A DNA stretch of 62,102 nucleotides, filler included, from Sluysia triapertura (Eukaryota): the NCBI GenBank assembly GCA_046118255.1. It is 5 parts of 5 records of this genome, joined end to end, with 100 filler letters (N's around TTAATTAATTAA, not from the genome) between each part and the next. Parts side by side here need not be neighbours in the genome. Positions count along the whole stretch, not along the records: positions 1 to 11,123 come from JBJNIA010188544.1; 4 more parts are not named here. The stretch is one strand, 5' to 3'. Shown here piece by piece: positions 1 through 11,123 of the stretch. The translations under genes and the position numbers were made by a program. The notes below the pieces were generated by a model that had not been told where the DNA came from, did not search any database, and saw nothing but the letters and a program-made list of their open reading frames with translations. Each line of letters opens with the position of its first letter. Positions within the stretch are counted from its first letter, which is position 1.

Positions 1-61
1 ATGTGACTCTAACCAAATATACAACTAGATGTTATAAAATCGTGTATTTAAATATTTGACA

Positions 62-900
62 TTAAAATCTCTCGCGAACCCATAGTTTAAGAAGGCCTGG
101 TTTATTAAATCCAGAATAAATAATATCATAATTATTTCTAAAATATGTCTTTGTGAATGTATTAATTACAATAATCGAACGGGTCAGTGTAAATGATGCA
201 GGTAAAAATAAAATGTTTATGTAATTGTTTATAACCTTGAATTGAGCAAGTTGAATTAGGATGATAGAATATCGATTTTTTAAAATCAAATATTTCGAAT
301 TTATGAGTAACGAATCGTAAGTAAAACTAAATATTTTTTCTTTATTTCTTCAACATTGTGCTAAATTAAAGCACGAAAATACAGTCCACTTGCTATATAC
401 TGTAAGGTTTGTTGTTTCAACGATATTTTCATCTTTAAATTTTGTCGAAATAGGTTTATATTTAAAATTATCTGTATGACTTCGCTGAAATTTGTTCCTA
501 ATTTGTTGTAATGATATCATTGAATTTCTAATACGATATAACTTTATTTTAGAATTATAAACTAAACTATGTAATTGATTTAATAACATAAAGTTTCTTC
601 TGCTTTTTGAAATTAATTACATCCAAATTAATATCATCTCTTAATCTTTGCTTTTCTGTTTCTGATTGAGAAAATGATGGTATACATTTTTGAACTTTTA
701 TGTAACATGTACTTTGGTATAATAAAGTTTTTCCACAAAAATATGTATTAATTGTAAATAAAACTAAGCACAAATTGTAGTACTGCTTCTTCACAATCAA
801 TAAAACATAGATTCTTAATTAACACTAATTCACATCATCGAAACTCTATGTAGTTTTTTTAAAAAACAAATTTTATGACAGATACTAAATGCGTACTTTA
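62..900 (-). pseudogene. Decayed ORF, possibly BTB/BACK-like
   Basis: A minus frame near 760-835 reads ELVLIKNLCFIDCEEAVLQFVLSFIYN, resembling the BACK motif LxVxxEExVFxAVxxW. Multiple stops and frameshifts. Confidence 0.25.
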
Positions 901-1589
901 TCGAGTAACACATACACAAATATATGACTGCAGATACATAACCTGGAAAAAACAAAAGAATAAGAAGAAAGGTTGCTAATAATAATAATGATAGAGAAAT
1001 AATAATGATAGCAACAACGTAATTATTATATAATTTAAAATAACGATATTGATGATGTTAATATGAAATTTATTATAAAAGTTATTATATGATAATCATA
1101 TTGTACAACAATAGCTATAGTTCATGATAGTCATGTACAATGGTTATGTTTGTTTTTTGAATGAGTTTAGTAATTTGTTTAATGATCTGTGTATATGTGA
1201 AATGTTTTTATGTGATGAAGTGTGATGAACTTTGTGTGATTTCTCTACACTAACTGACATAAGATGAAATAACATGATTTATATATTAAATGATCATCAG
1301 AACATTGGTATTTGTGCATTTTTACAAGAACTGCAAGATGCAAGATTTTTAATTGAATTAAGTACTTCATTTAAATAACAAATAATCATTTTCTGAAATA
1401 TTAATTTCATCATGGTATGCATCGTTTGATCAATATCACTTCTAAAATCAAGTGCCTCATCCATTTATTTATGATATTTTATATTAGAATAGTAAGACGA
1501 CAATAATGCAAAAACAATAACCTTTTACATTATAATAACAATATTAAGTTTTCGTTGTGTAATTAAGCATAGAAGTTACCATTGTCATG

Positions 1590-1737
1590 AGAGTTGCGAA
1601 CAATTGTTGAATTTTGAGTTGTGTTGTATCATTAGTGTTTCTGATATTTGTATATTATTTGTTGATTTTTAATAACTATACTAAGTTCAGTTGAAGTTTG
1701 TTTATGATAATTATGTTTTAGGGTTGGATTCACCATA
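1590..1737 (-). repeat. LTR-like repeat terminus, homologous to 22830-22980
   Basis: Shared blocks with 22830-22980 (tgttgaattttgag, tgtttctgat, ttatttgttgattttta, ttgaagtttgttta). Minus-strand starts are TATGGTGAATCCAAC and TGTGGCGAATTCAAC. Confidence 0.55.
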
Positions 1738-2633
1738 CATGTGTTTTCACCATATAATCTTTTCCATTTACAAAGGCAAGCGATTACTAGTATTTTAGTA
1801 AAAGTATGTGCCTACTAATATAAAACTGATGTTACACAATATACTGTGATATGTCGATGTTGTCGGTCTAAGACTCTTCCTAGCCAACTGTATCACGATT
1901 CTTTAGAGATCCAAGGCCAGGCTGTACCTTGAGGTGGTCCTGCGTAGAGATATCTCCATACTTAACTATAATTACATAACTATTTTATTAAATTTTAAAA
2001 TATCATTATTTAATTGTTCACTCACGTTTTCCATTTTCATTTCTTAACTATTAATGCGGCTATGTTCACTGTACAAGTATCATGTCTGGCAAGTGAAATT
2101 TAATGCAGAACAATTCTATATTGTGCAACATGTGACTTTCAGTTCATACTGAGTAAAATTCATACATTGTATTGGTGATCTCATTTATTAATGTACTTTA
2201 TTTCTAATTTACTTGGTTTGTTAATGAATTCTTTATATAAATTAAAAAAACTTCTTATTTTATATATCCTAATGACTTCGTGTAGTTTTATCCGGTATAT
2301 CGAATTAACACTCATCTCTGTTGTTAAATGCGGAAGTGCTAACACTAAAATCGATGAAATTTTATTTATGATACAAAATTTTAATTCTTACCAAATAATA
2401 TTTGCAAAATTAAAATTATCTTCAACACTGAATAAATCCTATTTTTAGTATGTCTTGTAGATTTTCTCCGTGTAATATTCAACCATTCATAATTTAACAT
2501 TATGATTCATTTATTATGAATTCAAATTTGATTTAATTATTAAATAATTCGCTTCACCAATAAATTCATCATTGTATAGTTAGAAGTACTGCTTGTATGT
2601 GAAGTAATGAAAAATGAAATAAATTAAAATATA

Positions 2634-4178
2634 TTAAAGTAGTATCTTGGAATAACTCGTCAGATAACTATTTTGATTGAACCGATTATACGTATAGTAA
2701 TAATGGTTATTGAAATTATTATAATTGGAATACCTATTACTATTATTATTTACGAAGTAATTATTATTATTAATTGGGTTGGCAGGAAAAATCGGTGTTG
2801 TGAGAGTTGGAATTGCCGAATACACGGGATAGAAGTAGTTTGGTGCTGGAAATAATATCGTGTTGTATGGATTATAAGTGCCGTTATAAAGATAAGAATT
2901 GACAAAATTATTGGTATTATAATTGTGATTATAATTCTGTGGACCCATTGTTATTTGTTCGGTGGCATGCTTGATTTGATTCTTTTCGATGAATTTTTTG
3001 ATACGATTTATGAATCTTTCAAAATTTTCTGGTTTATTAAATAAAGGAGCTTTTACGTAATCTAATGCTAAGAAAACATTTCCAAATTTCAAATAATTGT
3101 TGATCCATTGACTCACATAACTGAATCTAAAAAAAGCTTAATTGAATTCACAATGCAAACTGTTTACTTAAATGATTCTGTTAATCGTCGGAAGTACTTT
3201 CTTCTGTATCCCATCTTTTCAATTTCGCTGTAATTCCTTTTAGAAGGAAGTTGACTAATGTGAAACCACTTGATGGTCTAAAAGAATAATTATTTAATCT
3301 ACTTATTGATCTACTAACCTGTATTTCATTTATTGTGTTACAAGTGAACACTGTGTCTTCGGGCACGCCAATAATTATGAAGAAGCGGAAATTTACTTTT
3401 TTGTATTTGCATCGAAAATATAAGTTTGGATTTAATATTTTCGAAATATCCAATCCTATTTCTTCTTTCACTTCTCTGATTGCACAACTTTCGAAAGTTT
3501 CTCTATCCTCCTTCTTACCTCCAGGATACAACCAATAAGACGTCTTGCAATGTTCGACAAGCACTATTTTATCCAAGTTTTCATTTAATATAATACATGC
3601 ACAAACAGGATAGTTTCTTTGTATCCAATAAGAATAAGTATCAAGCCAGCAAAAATTTTTCAGTTTAATGTGATGGGTCAATTGGTAAAGAAAATTGAAG
3701 AACGATATATCGGAATCATTATTATCGATGTACTTCCAGTACATTTTTTGAACATCAAAACAGAAGTCCATATTACTTTGCTTACTGACTTGGAATTCTC
3801 TGATTTAATCAATCAATTTAATAATATTAAAATATACTTTTGTAAATTTATCATAATTTGTTGTGGAATCCAGTCTCTTCGTAAATCAGATACTTTGACA
3901 CATTCTTTCCAGTCTTCTTTGTAATTGACAAAGACTGATTTGTACATTTCTAAAACTGAAAATTAACATAAAAATAAGTCAAATAGCTAACCTTTATCTA
4001 AAAAAAAATTATATGCCATTGATTTGTGAATGTTAGGATTGAAGTATTTATCCATGAACTCGCAATATATCTTTTCAATTTCAATGAAGATGTCTGTCAA
4101 TTCCATATTATTAATATTGTGATCATTGACCAATTTTTCTAAAATATCGTCAAACGACAATTTAGATCGATTTTTCAT
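2634..4178 (-). CDS. Dcp2-like mRNA-decapping Nudix hydrolase, paralog 1 (5 coding exons, duplicated Box A, Asn/Tyr-rich tail)
   Basis: Intact Nudix box GKKEDRETFESCAIREVKEEIGL. Dcp2-type segments: FCFDVQKMYWKYID, YPVCACIILNENLDKIVLV, and spliced NEIQ/TIKWFHISQLP. GT-AG introns at about 3956-3991, 3802-3835, 3278-3318 and 3121-3167 restore one frame. Confidence 0.85.
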
Positions 4179-5359
4179 TTTCAATACCTTAAAAAATGAA
4201 TGCCAAATTTTTAAAACAAAAAAAGATTAAATAACAGTTGTATTTCATCAATTTTATTGAGATATTATTAATATTTCTGTTGCTTATTATATTTCATAAT
4301 TTAGGTCACAGTAATTCCAAAATATATAGAAATATCGAAAATAGAAAGTTCTTTATTTTTATTTCTTATTTTCGAGTTAATGTATTATGTAATCAATGCA
4401 ATATGGCTGTGAGAAGTATGAAGTAATTTTAATCAATTAATCAACAGATTTGTCTCTCAGTTTACATTTCTGTATCATCGTTTATCGAACCAATGATTAT
4501 TATTGATTAAATTTATGATAAAATTCAGTATGAAATTATAATACCGTCAATTTCCGAAAAATATCCTAAATTTTCAAAGATTTATTCTAATTATTACGTA
4601 ATTTTTTAAAACTAACCTTTTAAAACCCTTATAAATCTTCTTAATTGATTCTACCATTTTGCCTCTTTTGAACTAAAATCATTGTTTAAAAAATTGATTA
4701 TTACTACAATCAATGATGCATTATTATTCTTTGTTAAAAATTTATTTTAAACATTTTCAAAAATTCTATTTGAGTATTGTGTCAAAGTTATATTTCTTGA
4801 CGAAATATTGATTTGTCGTCACTCACGCGGAAGATATTGATATTTTTAAAAAATTGAAGTTAATCAGATTAAAAATGAAATATACGAAATGCGTTTGGGC
4901 ACAAAAATAGGTTGCGTTTTTAGAACATGCTGTATCAAACAATAATAATAAAAGGCCATTACAGCAAATTATTATAGAAGATTCATTAAAGATTTTTTGT
5001 AAAAGTACACAATCGCTAAGGAAACTAACTTATAAGGTTTCTGAATTTAAGTGTCCTTACTACGACGCCTTTTTTATTGACCGTAGTTGCAAATAACAAC
5101 GCTGTTGGAATAATTTTGAGGCACCTTATGGAAATAATAATTGTCGCCGCCTATATATATTGTTTATAAATTGTTTAGACATTACTTATTAGGACATAAA
5201 GTTTACTTGTATGCAGACTAAAGAGACTACGCTATCAGAATTCGATTTGAGCATTATTTATATTAAATAAAAAGGCTTCCGCTGGATATAAACCGCTAGT
5301 TGCGGGTGAACCAACATACATAGATTCGTAAATATAAATGTTTGTATTAAATGGATGTA

Positions 5360-7293
5360 TCACTTCGAATTTGATGTGGACAATACGTAGACATCGTCGT
5401 TGTACTCTGTTGAAGTATTGTCGATAGCGATATTAGTATAATAGTTATTACCACCGATCATTCGATAATCACCTTCATCGACAGTGACGCAGTGCTTGTT
5501 GGTGTTGCATCTTGCACAGTATTTATTGGTACAGTATCTACTAGTGTCACAACTGATGCAGTAATTACCAATACCGATATCAGTATCACAGTTAGTACAA
5601 TAACTACTAGAACAGGTGGCGGTACAATATTTAGAAGTGGCACATTCGATACAATAAATATCACTGTGACTTCTGTTGTTCCCTTTCCGAACAAAGGGAA
5701 AATGATTGGTCGTCCGAGTGACACTGAAGTCGTGTTCATTGGTCGATAATTTACAAGATCCATTCTTTGATTTATTATTTCTATTATTGTTTCCTTGTTT
5801 TGTGTTGGTTGCTTTGCATCTTACGTCTCCATAGTTACGGTTGTTAATTGACGTACAACTGTTAAATGAAAAGTCGAATATATTCACTTCGCAACTACTG
5901 CCATTTTTCGAAAAATCACTAACCGGCTTCATATCAAAACTGTTTGTCTTTCTATATTTTCTTGAATATGAATTTCTCCTGTAATGACAACCTTCAAATG
6001 AGCAATTTATTTTCTTTCCAACACTGTAGCCGCGCATCTTACTTAATACATCTTCATACTCATCATCTGTTGCTATGTTTTCATTTTCATCATTACAATA
6101 CCGAATGAAATCTTTTTCATAATTATCAACGCAATTACCCAATAATTCCCCTCTTTTTCTTGGTTTTGTATTCTTATTCGTCACATCATTTAGTGCTTCG
6201 TACACATTTTTACCGAAACAGCGATGATGTTTGATCCATTCTTTTAAATACCTGTGAAATAATGTTAGTTTCCAATAATCACAATAATTACCTGCAAGAA
6301 TTGATCACCAAATTGAATGAATGCACTTGAGAACCCATTTCTTCGTACGTATTTCTTTTCCAAGGAATATCACTTAAAGGAAACCATTTGATGGTCTAAG
6401 ATTACAAGTTACAATGATAGAATATAAATTATTACTTTTATTTCGTATTTCGACAGCGGACTGAATGCAGTGTCCTCAGACACACCAGCTACAATGAAAA
6501 AGCGTCTTCGAATATTGTGGAAACTGCTTCGAAAATATAAATTCGAATTTATTCTATTTGAAATGTCGATACCAATTTCTTCTTCCACTTCTCTTATGAC
6601 ACACTGTGTAAAGTTTTCTCTGTGTTCTTTCTTTCCACCCGGAAAATACCAAAGCGGTGAATTAAAACCGAGAAGTAACAAAATTTTACTATAATCTTCG
6701 TTCAATATTAAACAATACGAAACTGGATGGACCTTGCGCTTCCATTGGAAGTAATTTTCTAACCAATCAAATTCAACAGATTCACCAGTTTCAATGAAAA
6801 GGTATAAAAAGTGAATAAACGACAATGCCGAAATTTTGCCATCGTCTTTCATCTTCCAATACATTCTCTGTACATCGAAACAAAAATCTGGATAATTCAT
6901 CTTTTTAATTTTGAATAGTCTAAATTAGATATTGATAATGTTTTCTTAGATTATTACTTCTGAATATCGACAATTTTCATTTCAAAAAGTCGATTCTTTT
7001 TCAATTTCCATATGTGAAAGTACTCACGCCAATTTTCGTCATATTTGCTTATGTTTTCTTTGTACGTTTCAAAAACTATAACTTAATAAATAATATTCGA
7101 ATAATTTACTTATTTCTAAAAATGTGACACACGATTTTATTTCCTGAAACAAAGCATTGTAAAATCTGTCCATAAATGCGCAGTAGATTTTTTCTACAGC
7201 TGAAAATATGTCATCTAATTCCATTTCCCATATTCCCCCATTTGCCCTAACCATCTCATCGATAAAAATAAATTCATCACTGTTAGGGTCCAT
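5360..7293 (-). CDS. Dcp2-like mRNA-decapping Nudix hydrolase, paralog 2 (same intron positions, Cys-rich tail)
   Basis: Nudix box GKKEHRENFTQCVIREVEEEIGI; FCFDVQRMYWKMKD; spliced YEIK/TIKWFPLSDIP. Four short introns sit at the same positions as in paralog 1 (e.g. 7076-7109). The last exon is in frame with track ORF 5360..6205. Confidence 0.85.
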
Positions 7294-9618
7294 TTGAAAT
7301 AACGAAGAAGAAAAAGATTTAAAAAAAAACAAATTCTAGCATGATAAAGTTTAATTTTCAACATTCGAAATATAATAATCATAATAAAAATAATAATCCT
7401 AATCACAATCACAAAAGGAAGGACTGTACTGATGAAAAACTTAAGAAAGAAGGCAAACATCCGTAAAGAACATCATTATCTTGGCCAGGCTCTACGAGAG
7501 AAGCTTTGGTTGAAGTATAAGTTTAATTATTTTAATGCATTATGTTTTGAATGATCACCTAAATAATGAAAATAAAAAACTAAATAATGAAAATAAAAAT
7601 ATTACAAAAAATTAAACTTTTCTACAGCTTTTTTTATTTTATAATTAATAATTTCAATAATTAATATATAAAAAATTGAATCAATATTGACGTATAAATT
7701 CCATATTAAATAAAGTACTTACTTTAGTGAATAATTGAATTGTATCTAAAATAGAAATAATAAACATTGAGTTGTCCAAAAAACTATCCAGCGAAATAAA
7801 CCAATCGAGTAAATTTTAGTACGAGTATTTGAAATACACAAAGTAATATTATCAGTCATTCTTTATTAACATTTTTAAATAAATATGCTCATCATTCAAA
7901 TAATAAATAATAAGTTAGTAATAATTCGTTGGACATTAATTAATACGTCATCTTTTGAAACTGCACATCAATTTTAAACTTTTTATAAATATCTATTCGT
8001 AGATGAATCAGAACAGAACTGTATGTAAATATATTTTCAATATAAATGAGAAGATACTAGTAATTATTCTAGTCCAGTATTGATGGACATTCGAAAATCA
8101 CTATTCTTTTTCAATTTCTTTTGAAGCAGTTGATATCAGTTTTAATTATGATTTTTATGTACTTTGTTGAGATACTTCTGACATATTGAATTAAGAATGT
8201 TTGGAACCTTTAAAATGTCCTTGGATCTTAATAACGAGCTGCCAATTTCCCAATTTAAACTCCATTTTCAAATAAACGATTATAACATTTAAAAATCAAC
8301 ATATTTCATCGAATCTGGTAGATAATTTTAAATAATCATAATATATTTTGGATATCTTTGAACTGAATTTGCAACAAATATTTTTTATCTTTACTGTTAC
8401 AATCAAAATGAATCATATTTCATAATTTGCTCATTATATAAATTTTTTAATTCTTTGTTAAAATAATAAATTAAATTAATTATTAAAATATTTAAAATAT
8501 AATAGTTAAAAATATTCAATTTATAATATAAAAAATATGCTTTATTTTATATAAAAAATAAAACTGAATTAATTGACTATAAATAATTGAAATTTTTGAA
8601 ATTGTAAATCAAAAAATATTTACAAAGCACTTTTATTAATTGATTAAACAACTGACGATATTTTCTATTTTTTAATATTTACATTTTAATATTTACTATT
8701 TATTTCCATTTATTTTTTTTCATTTTTTGGAAAATAAGATTGAATTTATTACATGAACATGTTATGAACATATTATTTTTAAAGATAGATTATTTCTGAA
8801 AATATTAAATTTATCTAATTTGAAACTATTTCGTGCTTGCATTCCCAATATATGGATTTTTGGGGGATTTAATTTTTTTCTTCAGTTAACAATGATTGTA
8901 ACTTATCTAAATATATTGTGAGAAGCACGCATGTAGAATAAAGTTGATTTAAGATATCGTGAATTCACCAACGTACTGGACTTACCAACGAGGGCCAGCC
9001 GTTGGAATTTACGTAAAGAAAAGGTGCTTTTAAAATCTCAAAAATTTAATCAACTTCCTAACTAAAAACCTGGAGGTAACTTTATTAATGTTATTCTAAC
9101 TTGTCCTATTAACTTAAGAATGATTTTACACGAATCCTGTAATAAGGATTCTTTATATTATTTTTTAATTAAGGATTTTACCAAAAACTTGTTACTATTT
9201 TATTTTTCAATTATATCAGAACTCAATACGTTTCTTCTATGAAGGTTTATTATATTCACAAAAAGATAAAATACAATAATAAAATAATAATGATATATAT
9301 TTTGCTTGAATTACTAAATGTAATTCAAATGATACTAAAATTTTAAAAAAGGATTTTGCAGTGATCTATAACAAGATCACGAAAAATTAAATAAGTTAAT
9401 GATTTTACCTGTATTTTTCAGTGATATTTTTTAAATAATATCTTCCTTAAAGAAAATAAACTAACGTGTACAATTAATGTTAGACAGATTGATAGGTAAA
9501 GAATTATTCGTCCAATAAACTGTAAAAACTGCCAAGAGGATTGAAACTTTGAACCAACAAAGTTTATATTAACCGAATCTTGCTTTAAAAATTTGTGTTT
9601 GAAAAATTGTGAATTATG

Positions 9619-10302
9619 TTAATTATAATGCTGGTTATACGGGGTACAAGTGACACATAGAATCTGAGGTTTATTTAAAAAATTTGTGGCATATTGGAAT
9701 GCCACAAACATAAGCCTATCCTCATCATATGCAGAGAGAGGTGGCACATCTGTAAATGAGGAACCCATTTTCCAACGGCCTATGTTGTCAGTATCTTGGG
9801 CGAAAGGTAGAAAAGAGGGCGCAAAAAGAGGCGGGCGGGGTATGACAAATAAAAGGGCTACATACGTTGGATATTCCAACGCCTCTACTGTCAATTCACA
9901 ATCCTTTGTCAACTCAGAAAGACAGAGAGTTGACAAACCCTCTAAACGCAAGAGTAATGGGGTTTTGTTGACCGAAAGACTTATTTTGACTGTTCCGAAG
10001 GCGGATGCAATATATAAGGTATTAAAGGATTCGGGAGCGTTATTAAGACCACATAGAGATATAGCTGGACTTTCTGAAGTTAAGGAGAAAATATGTGTCG
10101 CTAAGTTGTCTGTAAGTTCCGATTTTAACTTACAGTCTGTCGCAAAAGAAGTGGGGTAAAAGACTAGGGTAGTATTAGCGGCGCAGAATCGTTCTACCGC
10201 TGTATAAAAAGCCCTTATTTGAGTAAGAACGCGGGGCTGGTGGCGATGATTGAGTTGAAGTTGAAGATCTTGTTGTGGCTGTTGTTGAGGTGGTGTTTTG
10301 TA
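9619..10302 (-). CDS. Unknown protein; ~228-codon open frame starting after a splice acceptor
   Basis: The frame of track ORF 9619..9951 stays open up to about 10362 (YKTPPQQQPQQDLQLQLNHRHQPRVLTQIRAFYTAVERFCAANTTLVFYPTSF...). It lacks a 5' ATG, and tttttttatcag acceptor precedes 10302. Confidence 0.55.
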   Translation of the reverse strand, partial: YKTPPQQQPQQDLQLQLNHRHQPRVLTQIRAFYTAVERFCAANTTLVFYPTSFATDCKLKSELTDNLATHIFSLTSESPAISLCGLNNAPESFNTLYIASAFGTVKISLSVNKTPLLLRLEGLSTLCLSELTKDCELTVEALEYPTYVALLFVIPRPPLFAPSFLPFAQDTDNIGRWKMGSSFTDVPPLSAYDEDRLMFVAFQYATNFLNKPQILCVTCTPYNQHYN

Positions 10303-10431
10303 CTGATAAAAAAACGTTAAAAATATAACGAAAATGCATATGTAAAAAGGAAGTTTTTTGTCTTAAGTAATTAATTTTTTCAACATAATTCATTTTTTAT
10401 GATATAATATATAATAATATTTGAGAAATAA

Positions 10432-10968
10432 CTAAAATTGTTTAAGAAAAGGATTTTTACTTAATCGTTTATTTCTTTTATGAAATTTTTTAAGTTGGCG
10501 TCTTCGATAATTACGCCTTTGAGACTTAGTTAGTCCTGGTGGATAATCAGGCTTTGGCATCTGAAATCCGTTATACAGGACAGTGACACCTGGAAAAGTT
10601 GGAGGTTTATAAATATAAACACTCGCATTCTCCTGGAGCCCATTATAAGCTACAACAGGATTAGACCCAGGTTTGATGAATTTGACGGAGAAGTCGTAGG
10701 ACTTACGAAATAATTTTTTATAGTAGATATCGAATTCGGTGATTGTGACTCGGCACAAAGGGCAAGAAGGTAAAGGGGTAGGAGCAGAGTCGAACAGAAA
10801 GTATAGACATCTAAAGTGAAATCGATGTCTACATGGCAATGCGATAGCGTAGTATCTGTGTATGGTTCTTCTACATATGGAGTATAGGGTGAATCGTAAT
10901 GATGATTTCGTGATTTTGCTAGAAAATAGAATAATAAGATGATTTTTATAAAATAGTAAATAAAACAA
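10432..10968 (-). CDS. RING-finger protein (degenerate RING-H2) with basic C-terminus
   Basis: YSIC...LPCRHRFHFRCL...SCPLCR, with the first Cys replaced by Tyr. Basic tail SQRRNYRRRQLKKFHKRNKR. No 5' ATG; candidate acceptor near 10919. Confidence 0.7.
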   Translation of the reverse strand: MFYLLFYKNHLIILFSSKITKSSLRFTLYSICRRTIHRYYAIALPCRHRFHFRCLYFLFDSAPTPLPSCPLCRVTITEFDIYYKKLFRKSYDFSVKFIKPGSNPVVAYNGLQENASVYIYKPPTFPGVTVLYNGFQMPKPDYPPGLTKSQRRNYRRRQLKKFHKRNKRLSKNPFLKQF

Positions 10969-11123
10969 ATTTAAAATTTACACTTATTTAGCTAATTGTA
11001 TTAGTAAAACTCATTCTTTTTTAATTATTGTGATGATTTTACTAAAATATGAATTTCAACACTGTCCTATCCACAACCGAAAATGGGCAGTTAACAGCCG
11101 CCACATATGGTTAGTGAACAGGA

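What the first reader, a model, noticed from the sequence alone, without database searches (positions are those of the whole stretch)
2634..7293. Tandem divergent Dcp2 paralogs, each with a duplicated Box A regulatory domain
Seen: after splicing, both genes read BoxA'-BoxA-Nudix. First copy: FDDILEKL...DIFIEIEKIYCEFMD / DIFSAVEKIYCAFMD. Second copy: WIPQQIMINL...DFCFDVQKMYWKYID / DFCFDVQRMYWKMKD. Known: Dcp2 has a single Box A, whose H-W-F-Y-x-D Trp helps sandwich the cap and whose N-terminal helix binds Dcp1. In both genes the extra copy has Cys at that Trp position, and FP(K/R)GK is PGGK, while the catalytic glutamates are intact. Inference: a lineage-specific decapping subfamily with altered cap specificity (e.g. 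trimethyl or spliced-leader caps) or a second partner-binding surface.
Basis: partly seen in the sequence, partly recalled or inferred. Interest (0 to 1): 0.75.

Follow-up and report, generated by a model that had tools for sequence, protein, structure and literature searches.

The report
Dcp2 paralogs with doubled regulatory domain
Two neighbouring genes in a flatworm-like genome encode divergent copies of the mRNA-decapping enzyme Dcp2 that carry two copies of its N-terminal regulatory domain instead of one, an arrangement not seen in the 150 closest Dcp2 relatives, but what the extra domain does is untested.

Summary
On the minus strand lie two head-to-tail genes of five exons each, 462 aa and 593 aa. 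Their introns are 34-41 nt, GT-AG, at the same places and phases.

Two paralogs elsewhere in the genome each lack one of the first two introns. This shows that the first exons are read in frame with the Nudix exon. No RNA data were available.

The Nudix domain is clearly Dcp2-type, with an intact Nudix box. The domain next to it (B) keeps the gatekeeper Trp and Asp of Box A.

The extra N-terminal domain (A) has Cys (Ile in one paralog) at the Trp position. A resembles Box A only weakly by sequence, and Pfam DCP2 detects neither A nor B. An AlphaFold model of A, built from a family-only alignment, has Dcp2 N-terminal domains as its best matches in the PDB (Z up to 8.0, top 8 entries).

The genome holds at least four intact A-B-Nudix genes, decayed copies, and a separate canonical single-Box-A Dcp2. 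In a tree the family is sister to that canonical gene, within a tapeworm Dcp2 clade.

PGGK is not a subfamily mark: the canonical gene and tapeworm Dcp2 share it. Altered cap specificity and a second partner surface remain speculation.

Verdict: a new variant of a known kind, of moderate interest.

The parts
3992..4178 (-). Gene 1 exon 1: start codon and first two thirds of the extra NRD-like domain A. The A core IYCEFMD lies at 4050-4070, with Cys39 at the Trp position.
   Evidence: fused with exon 2 in paralog C227241
3838..3955 (-). Gene 1 exon 2: end of domain A (YKEDW) and first helix of domain B (WIPQQIMINL).
   Evidence: fused with exon 3 in paralog C172079
3319..3799 (-). Gene 1 exon 3: Box A core of domain B (MYWKYID at 3724-3744), hinge, and Nudix domain with YPGGK (3514-3528) and Nudix box (3451-3519).
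3168..3277 (-). Gene 1 exon 4: end of the Nudix fold and a Box B-like stretch (TIKWF..LP, then an aromatic pair).
2634..3126 (-). Gene 1 exon 5: C-terminal region with an Asn/Tyr-rich low-complexity tail, and the stop codon.
7110..7293 (-). Gene 2 exon 1: start codon and first part of domain A. The A core IYCAFMD lies at 7168-7188. The Cys38 codon is 7180-7182, with a synonymous variant at 7180 in run X1.
6958..7075 (-). Gene 2 exon 2: end of domain A and first helix of domain B.
6436..6919 (-). Gene 2 exon 3: Box A core of domain B (MYWKMKD at 6844-6864), FPGGK (6631-6645), Nudix box (6568-6636).
6292..6395 (-). Gene 2 exon 4: Box B-like stretch (TIKWF..IP).
5360..6251 (-). Gene 2 exon 5: long C-terminal region without a Pfam match. 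It contains four CxxC motifs near residues 497-545, and the stop codon.

Best explanation
The two genes belong to a lineage-specific family of Dcp2-derived Nudix decapping enzymes in an AT-rich, flatworm-like genome. The family has at least four intact genes and several decayed copies.

The family arose from the lineage's own canonical Dcp2. Before the family radiated, the whole N-terminal regulatory domain (NRD, which holds Box A) was duplicated in tandem. This gave the layout A-B-Nudix-Box B-variable tail.

The Nudix-proximal copy B keeps the gatekeeper Trp and Asp. Together with the intact Nudix box and the general-base Glu, it forms the catalytic core, which should decap as ordinary Dcp2 does.

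The distal copy A keeps the NRD fold and length but has Cys or Ile in place of the cap-stacking Trp. It is also the fastest-evolving domain. A probably does not bind the cap. It most likely serves as an extra docking or regulatory module, for Dcp1's EVH1 domain or for an activator.

Shown here: gene structure, family membership, architecture, residue states, descent from the canonical gene. Inferred: catalytic activity, and the role of A.
For: - Gene models have conserved tiny introns. Both junctions are confirmed by intron-less paralogs.
- An independent Logan contig of 5,810 nt covers 2600-7400 with one synonymous difference and no gaps.
- The Nudix exons are Dcp2-type. The best PDB hits are all Dcp2, at E 1e-17 to 1e-18. 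The big search found 2432 hits. Every hit later scanned or looked up was a Dcp2, and 143 of the top 150 match a Box A profile. The query's B core aligns at the targets' Box A position.
- hhalign of B against 105 canonical NRDs gives 79.5% probability, P 1.5e-5.
- A against the canonical Box A HMM scores up to 12.9 bits, reached by 1 of 3000 shuffles.
- A against the genome's own NRD gives z 4.8-5.6.
- An HMM built from A alone places its best hit inside Box A in 89 of 111 canonical Dcp2, where 21% is expected.
- A family-only AlphaFold model of A (pLDDT 66.3) has the S. pombe Dcp2 NRD at rank 1 and S. cerevisiae Dcp2 at rank 2 of 48,161 PDB representatives, with Z 6.6 and 6.1.
- In the second look the top 8 entries are all Dcp2. 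The best is 2qkm_D: Z 8.0, rmsd 3.1 A, 80 residues. The next unrelated entry has Z 5.8.
- Trp is invariant in 105 of 105 canonical NRDs. In A it is Cys in three members and Ile in one; in B it is Trp in all four.
- In the tree the family is monophyletic (0.998), sister to the genome's canonical Dcp2 (0.887), inside a tapeworm Dcp2 clade (0.993).
- The shared WTFPGGK and the shared phase-0 intron after EI(K/Q) fit that origin.
- Background on the gatekeeper Trp/Asp and on Dcp1 EVH1 binding to the NRD: PMC8984151.
Against: - Pfam DCP2 (PF05026) gives no hit at E<=1 for the complete A domain or for ORFs containing B. The own-genome scan did not flag this contig.
- hhalign probability for A against canonical NRDs is only 6.5% (P 0.0057), and for A against B 8.6%.
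- Direct A-B Smith-Waterman is at noise level.
- The structural Z scores of 6-8 lie in the range that helical bundles can reach by chance. Foldseek E-values are 2-5. The Atlas shape search gave unrelated helical proteins at TM 0.49.
- There is no RNA evidence that either gene is expressed.
- The four A segments are related to one another, so their scores are not independent tests.
- Nothing tests catalysis, Dcp1 binding or the role of A.
Confidence: 0.6

Rival explanations
1. Domain A is an unrelated helical N-terminal extension. Its likeness to Box A (the D-I-F..E..Y-C-x-F-x-D pattern and six helices) would be chance or convergence. The proteins would then be Dcp2 paralogs with one degenerate Box A and a novel leader.
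For: - No Pfam DCP2 hit for A.
- hhalign probability 6.5%.
- A-B pairwise similarity not significant.
- Z 6-8 is middling for helical models, and Foldseek E>1.
- The Atlas search returns unrelated helical proteins at similar TM.
Against: - Dcp2 NRDs rank 1 and 2 of 48,161 chains and fill the top 8 in the second look. The model was built without any canonical Dcp2 sequence.
- The A-only HMM lands in Box A in 80% of canonical Dcp2.
- A of C227241 scores as well as its own B against the canonical HMM.
- The alignments are in register over HMM positions 20-77.
Confidence: 0.12
2. The genes are unexpressed or decaying duplicates of Dcp2 with no present function. The odd architecture would be a relic of a duplication accident.
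For: - No RNA run holds the region.
- The family leaves much pseudogene debris with stop codons.
- A evolves fast, at 16-42% identity between members.
Against: - Four members keep open frames across 5 exons at only 45-55% identity.
- All four keep the catalytic Glu residues of the Nudix box and the B-domain Trp. Three keep the box complete; C172079 has Asp at the box's final Gly.
- Decayed copies show what unconstrained copies look like.
- The one variant seen in X1 is synonymous.
Confidence: 0.1
3. One reading: the family has an altered cap specificity (for example trimethylguanosine caps of spliced-leader mRNAs) because of the Trp-to-Cys copy and PGGK.
For: - The genome looks flatworm-like.
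- From my own knowledge, flatworms use spliced-leader trans-splicing; this was not checked here.
- TMG caps occur on trans-spliced mRNAs (PMC8984151).
- A Trp-less extra NRD is unusual.
Against: - The NRD adjacent to the Nudix domain (B) keeps the canonical Trp and Asp.
- PGGK is shared with the canonical Dcp2 of this genome and of tapeworms, so it is not specific to the family.
- From my own knowledge, not verified here, ordinary nematode Dcp2 already decaps TMG-capped RNA.
Confidence: 0.1
4. Domain A is a built-in decoy or autoinhibitor. It would compete with B for the Nudix docking surface or for Dcp1, and keep the enzyme off until a partner displaces it.
For: - A has the NRD fold but lacks the cap-stacking Trp.
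- In known Dcp2, NRD-Nudix docking and Dcp1 binding control activity (PMC8984151).
- Only one intact Dcp1 candidate was found in the genome.
Against: There is no direct evidence. It differs from the docking-module reading only in sign (inhibition versus recruitment).
Confidence: 0.2

Closest known systems
Dcp2 (catalytic subunit of the Dcp1-Dcp2 mRNA decapping complex; e.g. S. pombe 2QKM/5J3T, S. cerevisiae 6Y3Z, K. lactis 5LON)
   Same: - Nudix domain most similar to Dcp2, with intact Nudix box and general-base Glu.
- An NRD with gatekeeper Trp/Asp directly before the Nudix domain.
- A Box B-like stretch after it.
- A variable low-complexity C-terminus.
   Different: - Two NRD-like domains in tandem instead of one.
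- The distal one has Cys or Ile at the invariant Trp.
- Both NRDs are too divergent for Pfam DCP2.
- Box B has lost its Pro-Phe.
- None of the 150 best relatives has two Box A domains.
The same genome's canonical Dcp2 (contig C202457, locus L001), and tapeworm Dcp2 (Taenia, Schistocephalus)
   Same: - The WTFPGGK-type motif.
- A phase-0 intron after EI(K/Q).
- A phase-2 intron just after the first NRD helix.
- Sister position in the tree.
   Different: The canonical gene has a single NRD starting at residue 1 and passes the Pfam DCP2 cut-off (30.1 bits). The family members are about 29% identical to it in the Nudix exon.
P0001, an unnamed 588-aa protein from an ENA contig (best hit of the big search)
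   Same: A Dcp2-like protein with a duplicated domain. Its second Nudix domain has FPGGN.
   Different: There the Nudix domain is duplicated (Box A-Nudix-Nudix), not the NRD.

Membership tests
Dcp2 (Nudix mRNA-decapping enzyme) | Nudix box G-x5-E-x7-R-E-U-x-E-E-x-G-U with the catalytic glutamates | tested here: met
   Both window genes and C227241 match the full pattern. C172079 has Asp at the final Gly but keeps all the Glu residues. Pfam NUDIX E 1e-11.
Dcp2 (Nudix mRNA-decapping enzyme) | Nudix domain closer to Dcp2 than to other Nudix classes | tested here: met
   The top 14 PDB sequence hits are all Dcp2, at E 1e-18 to 1e-11. The next class (MutT) is at 1e-6. In the big search, every hit scanned or looked up was a Dcp2, and 143 of the top 150 match a Box A profile.
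Dcp2 (Nudix mRNA-decapping enzyme) | N-terminal regulatory domain with gatekeeper Trp and Asp directly upstream of the Nudix domain | tested here: met
   Domain B has M(Y/H)W-x-x-x-(D/E) in all four members. hhalign against 105 NRDs gives 79.5%, P 1.5e-5. phmmer alignments place it at the targets' Box A position.
Dcp2 (Nudix mRNA-decapping enzyme) | Pfam DCP2 Box A (PF05026) at the gathering score of 28 bits | tested here: not met
   No hit at E<=1 for exons, for the complete A domain, or for B-containing ORFs. The contig is absent from the own-genome scan. The joined proteins could not be given to Pfam because they have no reference.
Dcp2 (Nudix mRNA-decapping enzyme) | Box B after the Nudix fold (I-x-W-F..LP .. 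F-F/Y-x-V-x-P-F) | tested here: inconclusive
   TIKWF..(L/I)P and an aromatic (YF or SF) are present, but the Pro-Phe is lost, as it is in the genome's canonical gene.
Dcp2 (Nudix mRNA-decapping enzyme) | Releases m7GDP from capped RNA; binds Dcp1 | not testable with these tools
   Needs biochemistry. A Dcp1 EVH1 candidate exists on C210242.
Second Dcp2 NRD / Box A domain (domain A) | Adopts the all-helical Dcp2 NRD fold | tested here: met
   The model is of moderate confidence: pLDDT 66.3, family-only MSA. VIA ranks 1-2 of 48,161 chains are Dcp2. The top 8 in the second look are all Dcp2, up to Z 8.0, rmsd 3.1 A, 80 aligned.
Second Dcp2 NRD / Box A domain (domain A) | Significant sequence similarity to Box A | tested here: inconclusive
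   Custom HMM scores 3.7-12.9 bits, with empirical p 0.0003-0.05. hhalign P 0.0057 but probability 6.5%. Smith-Waterman against the genome's own NRD gives z 4.8-5.6. Pfam gives none.
Second Dcp2 NRD / Box A domain (domain A) | Invariant gatekeeper Trp | tested here: not met
   Cys in three members and Ile in one. Trp is present in 105 of 105 canonical NRDs.

The most novel reading that the evidence does not exclude
The tandem-NRD Dcp2 family would be a new way of regulating decapping. The Trp-less distal NRD would act as a built-in second Dcp1/EVH1 or activator docking site, or as a decoy that gates the catalytic NRD. This would give a parasite lineage several differently wired decapping enzymes beside the canonical one, perhaps for stage-specific, germline or trans-spliced mRNAs.
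Probability: 0.2. Interest if true: 0.7.

Novelty: new variant of a known kind. Interest (0 to 1): 0.5.

Why it matters
Dcp2 is controlled through its single N-terminal regulatory domain. That domain binds Dcp1 and supplies half of the cap-binding pocket.

A natural enzyme with two such domains separates those roles. One copy keeps the cap-stacking Trp and the other has lost it. It could show which NRD surfaces are needed for partner binding and which for catalysis.

The family also shows that the decapping machinery, usually single-copy, has expanded by birth and death in one flatworm-like lineage. This bears on mRNA turnover in parasites. The practical weight is limited until expression and activity are shown.

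Tried and rejected
- Pfam exon by exon and on complete A or B ORFs: NUDIX only, no DCP2.
- Own-genome PF05026 scan: found the canonical gene but not this contig.
- Word search with the Nudix exon and with the A domain: blank both times. This says little because of the tool's length limit.
- ESM Atlas features for A: low recognition, bacterial DUF3841. Judged chance.
- Single-sequence AlphaFold of A: pLDDT 47.7, and its Foldseek search was meaningless.
- Foldseek on the better model: Dcp2 chains have the best TM (0.50), but E is 2-5.
- Atlas shape search: unrelated helical proteins, TM below 0.5.
- Direct A-versus-B Smith-Waterman: not significant.
- RNA runs: none. The only holder looks like DNA and may be the assembly's own sample.
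- Weak A-HMM hits in L032, L012 and the N-terminal extension of C172079: at noise level, rejected.
- tRNA, Rfam and tandem-repeat scans: nothing relevant.
- The first treekit run failed on a row name and was redone with FastTree.
- Joined (spliced) proteins were used only inside local scripts. They were not handed to Pfam, the PDB, the big search or AlphaFold, because they have no reference. Those searches were done exon by exon, or with paralog exons that are naturally fused.
Full report
WHAT IS THERE. The piece (1-11123) is contig C188544 of a 619-Mb assembly in 263,945 contigs. GC content is 19-38%. Between 2634 and 7293 the minus strand carries two head-to-tail genes.

I built the models from the sequence. 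Gene 1 has exons 4178-3992, 3955-3838, 3799-3319, 3277-3168 and 3126-2634, and gives an uninterrupted 462-aa frame. Gene 2 has exons 7293-7110, 7075-6958, 6919-6436, 6395-6292 and 6251-5360, and gives 593 aa. All eight introns are GT-AG, 34-41 nt, and sit at the same places and phases in both genes. About 1.2 kb separates the genes.

IS THE FIRST EXON SPLICED TO THE NUDIX EXON? No RNA run holds the region, so there is no direct evidence. The comparative evidence is good.
- The genome has further paralogs.
- On contig C227241, exons 1 and 2 are one continuous exon.
- On contig C172079, exons 2 and 3 are one continuous exon.
- In both cases the reading across the former junction is what my splice models predict.

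A 5,810-nt contig from a public run covers 2600-7400 without gaps. It has a single difference, G>A at 7180. This is the synonymous third base of the Cys codon in gene 2's A core. That run may be the assembly's own sample, so it confirms the sequence but is not independent.

THE CATALYTIC PART.
- The Nudix exons hit Pfam NUDIX at E 1e-11.
- Among solved structures their 14 best matches are all Dcp2, at E 1e-18 to 1e-11. The next Nudix class is at 1e-6.
- The exhaustive search of 1.84 billion representatives gave 2432 hits and none above 47% identity.
- Every hit I went on to scan or look up was a Dcp2, from fungi, insects, nematodes and tapeworms. Of the top 150, 143 match a Box A profile.
- The query's MDFCFDVQKMYW stretch aligns at target positions of about 31-45, which is Box A.
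- The Nudix box, the general-base Glu (NEIQ, YEIK) and a Box B-like TIKWF..LP are present.

DOMAIN B. The domain next to the Nudix domain has Trp and Asp at the gatekeeper positions, which the review PMC8984151 calls invariant and key to cap binding. A four-member profile of B matches a profile of 105 canonical NRDs at 79.5% probability, P 1.5e-5. Pfam's own DCP2 model, however, does not report B at E<=1.

DOMAIN A, THE CLAIMED EXTRA BOX A. Sequence evidence is weak but consistent.
- Direct A-versus-B Smith-Waterman is at noise level.
- A of both window genes resembles the NRD of the genome's own canonical Dcp2 at z 4.8 and 5.6. Only 3 and 1 of 2000 shuffles reach these scores. B gives z 4.2 and 1.7.
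- I built a Box A HMM from 105 canonical NRDs. It scores the four A segments at 12.9, 8.0, 4.1 and 3.7 bits, reached by 1, 18, 118 and 146 of 3000 shuffles.
- The same HMM scores the B segments at 16.5, 12.0, 10.7 and 5.1 bits. A aligns over HMM positions 20-77, further than B does.
- An HMM made only from the four A segments puts its best match inside Box A in 89 of 111 canonical Dcp2 proteins. By length, 21% would be expected. Canonical Box A domains are all related, so this amounts to roughly one test rather than 111.
- hhalign gives A against canonical NRDs P 0.0057 (probability 6.5%). A against B gives P 0.0039, in register over 73 columns.

STRUCTURE OF A. The A domain of C227241 is a single exon (L006:524-829), so it could be folded by reference.
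- Without an alignment the model was poor, at pLDDT 47.7.
- With a seven-row alignment of A pieces from the family only, and no canonical Dcp2, pLDDT rose to 66.3, and to 66-82 over residues 10-75.
- Aligned against 48,161 PDB representatives, rank 1 is the S. pombe Dcp2 NRD: 2qkl_B, Z 6.6, rmsd 3.7 A, 80 of 90 residues. Rank 2 is S. cerevisiae Dcp2 at Z 6.1.
- In the second look the eight best entries are all Dcp2, with Z 8.0 to 6.0. The first unrelated entry has Z 5.8.

These Z values are middling for helical proteins. Foldseek E-values are above 1, and the Atlas search gave unrelated helical models at TM 0.49. The weight therefore lies in the ranking, not in the score. Taken together, I accept A as a diverged NRD.

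RESIDUE STATES. At the Trp that is invariant in 105 of 105 canonical NRDs, A has Cys in both window genes and in C227241, and Ile in C172079. B has Trp in all four. Identity between family members is 16-42% in A, 27-53% in B and 50-57% in the Nudix part. A is thus the least constrained domain, yet it is kept in frame in all four.

THE FAMILY AND ITS ORIGIN.
- The genome has a canonical Dcp2 on C202457, with one NRD starting at residue 1. Its Pfam DCP2 score is 30.1 bits, over the cut-off. Its Nudix box is intact.
- Its best matches are Taenia and Schistocephalus Dcp2, and all three read WTFPGGK.
- Gly at that position occurs in only 3 of 150 Dcp2 representatives. Two of those are tapeworm sequences (P0013, P0102) and the third (P0004) is an unnamed ENA fragment. 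PGGK is therefore a trait of this lineage's Dcp2, not of the new family.
- A FastTree tree of 49 NRD-plus-Nudix sequences makes the four A-B-Nudix genes monophyletic (0.998). They are sister to the genome's canonical gene (0.887), and all lie within a clade with the tapeworm Dcp2 (0.993). Long branches call for caution.
- The phase-0 intron after EI(K/Q) is shared by the family and the canonical gene. So, to within four residues, is the phase-2 intron just after the first NRD helix.
- All four members have A and B, so the NRD duplication predates the family's radiation.
- At least six further loci carry stop-interrupted pieces, which indicates birth-and-death turnover.
- None of the 150 closest Dcp2 representatives has two Box A domains. 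The word search found no relative of A, but database coverage of this lineage is unknown.

HOW IT LIKELY WORKS. B and the Nudix domain look like a competent Dcp2 core. A has the NRD fold without the cap-stacking Trp. In known Dcp2 the NRD binds the EVH1 domain of Dcp1, and its docking on the Nudix domain switches activity (PMC8984151). A Dcp1 candidate exists on C210242. The most economical reading is that A is an extra docking or regulatory module. Whether it recruits or inhibits is open.

LIMITS. There is no expression data. The structural model of A has moderate confidence. The joined proteins were analysed only in local scripts and were not passed to the search tools. The organism's name is hidden and is inferred as flatworm-like from its Dcp2 and its tiny introns.

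Noticed in passing
L002:1276-3096 (-), contig C247472: A 606-aa intron-free ORF without a Nudix domain has a Box A-like stretch at residues 493-532. Pfam DCP2 scores 23.5 bits, under the cut-off of 28. It may be an orphan NRD-like segment or chance.
   Followed up: partly
P0001 (ENA contig, 588 aa): The best hit of the big search is a Dcp2-like protein with one Box A and two Nudix domains in tandem. The second Nudix domain has FPGGN.
   Followed up: partly
window 5480-5700 (-), gene 2 residues about 490-550: The C-terminal region of gene 2 has four CxxC motifs set in YC..C repeats, so it may bind metal. No Pfam match.
   Followed up: no
window 2634-2950 (-): Gene 1 ends in an Asn/Tyr-rich low-complexity tail, unlike the tail of gene 2. 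The C-terminal regions of the paralogs are unrelated.
   Followed up: no
window 10432-10968 (-): An ORF with a RING-H2 finger (Pfam zf-RING_2, E 1.6e-6). It is a neighbouring gene in a stretch of higher GC (36-38%).
   Followed up: no
window 7180: The public-run contig reads A where the window has G. On the coding strand this is TGC to TGT, a synonymous change in the Cys codon at the former Trp position of gene 2's domain A.
   Followed up: yes
window 5167-5212 and 7368-7397: Short words here have depths in the hundreds to thousands in run X1, so they are parts of repeats dispersed in the genome. 7368-7403 is also an 18-nt tandem repeat.
   Followed up: no
contigs C184619, C139837 (two copies), C227791, C37148, C189892, C187801: Stop-interrupted or partial pieces of the same A-B-Nudix family. 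These are probable pseudogenes. C139837 holds two copies about 1.4 kb apart, so tandem arrangement recurs.
   Followed up: partly
L001:1-75, contig C202457: The contig with the canonical Dcp2 begins with a near-perfect inverted repeat of about 30 nt per arm, resembling the end of a small mobile element.
   Followed up: no
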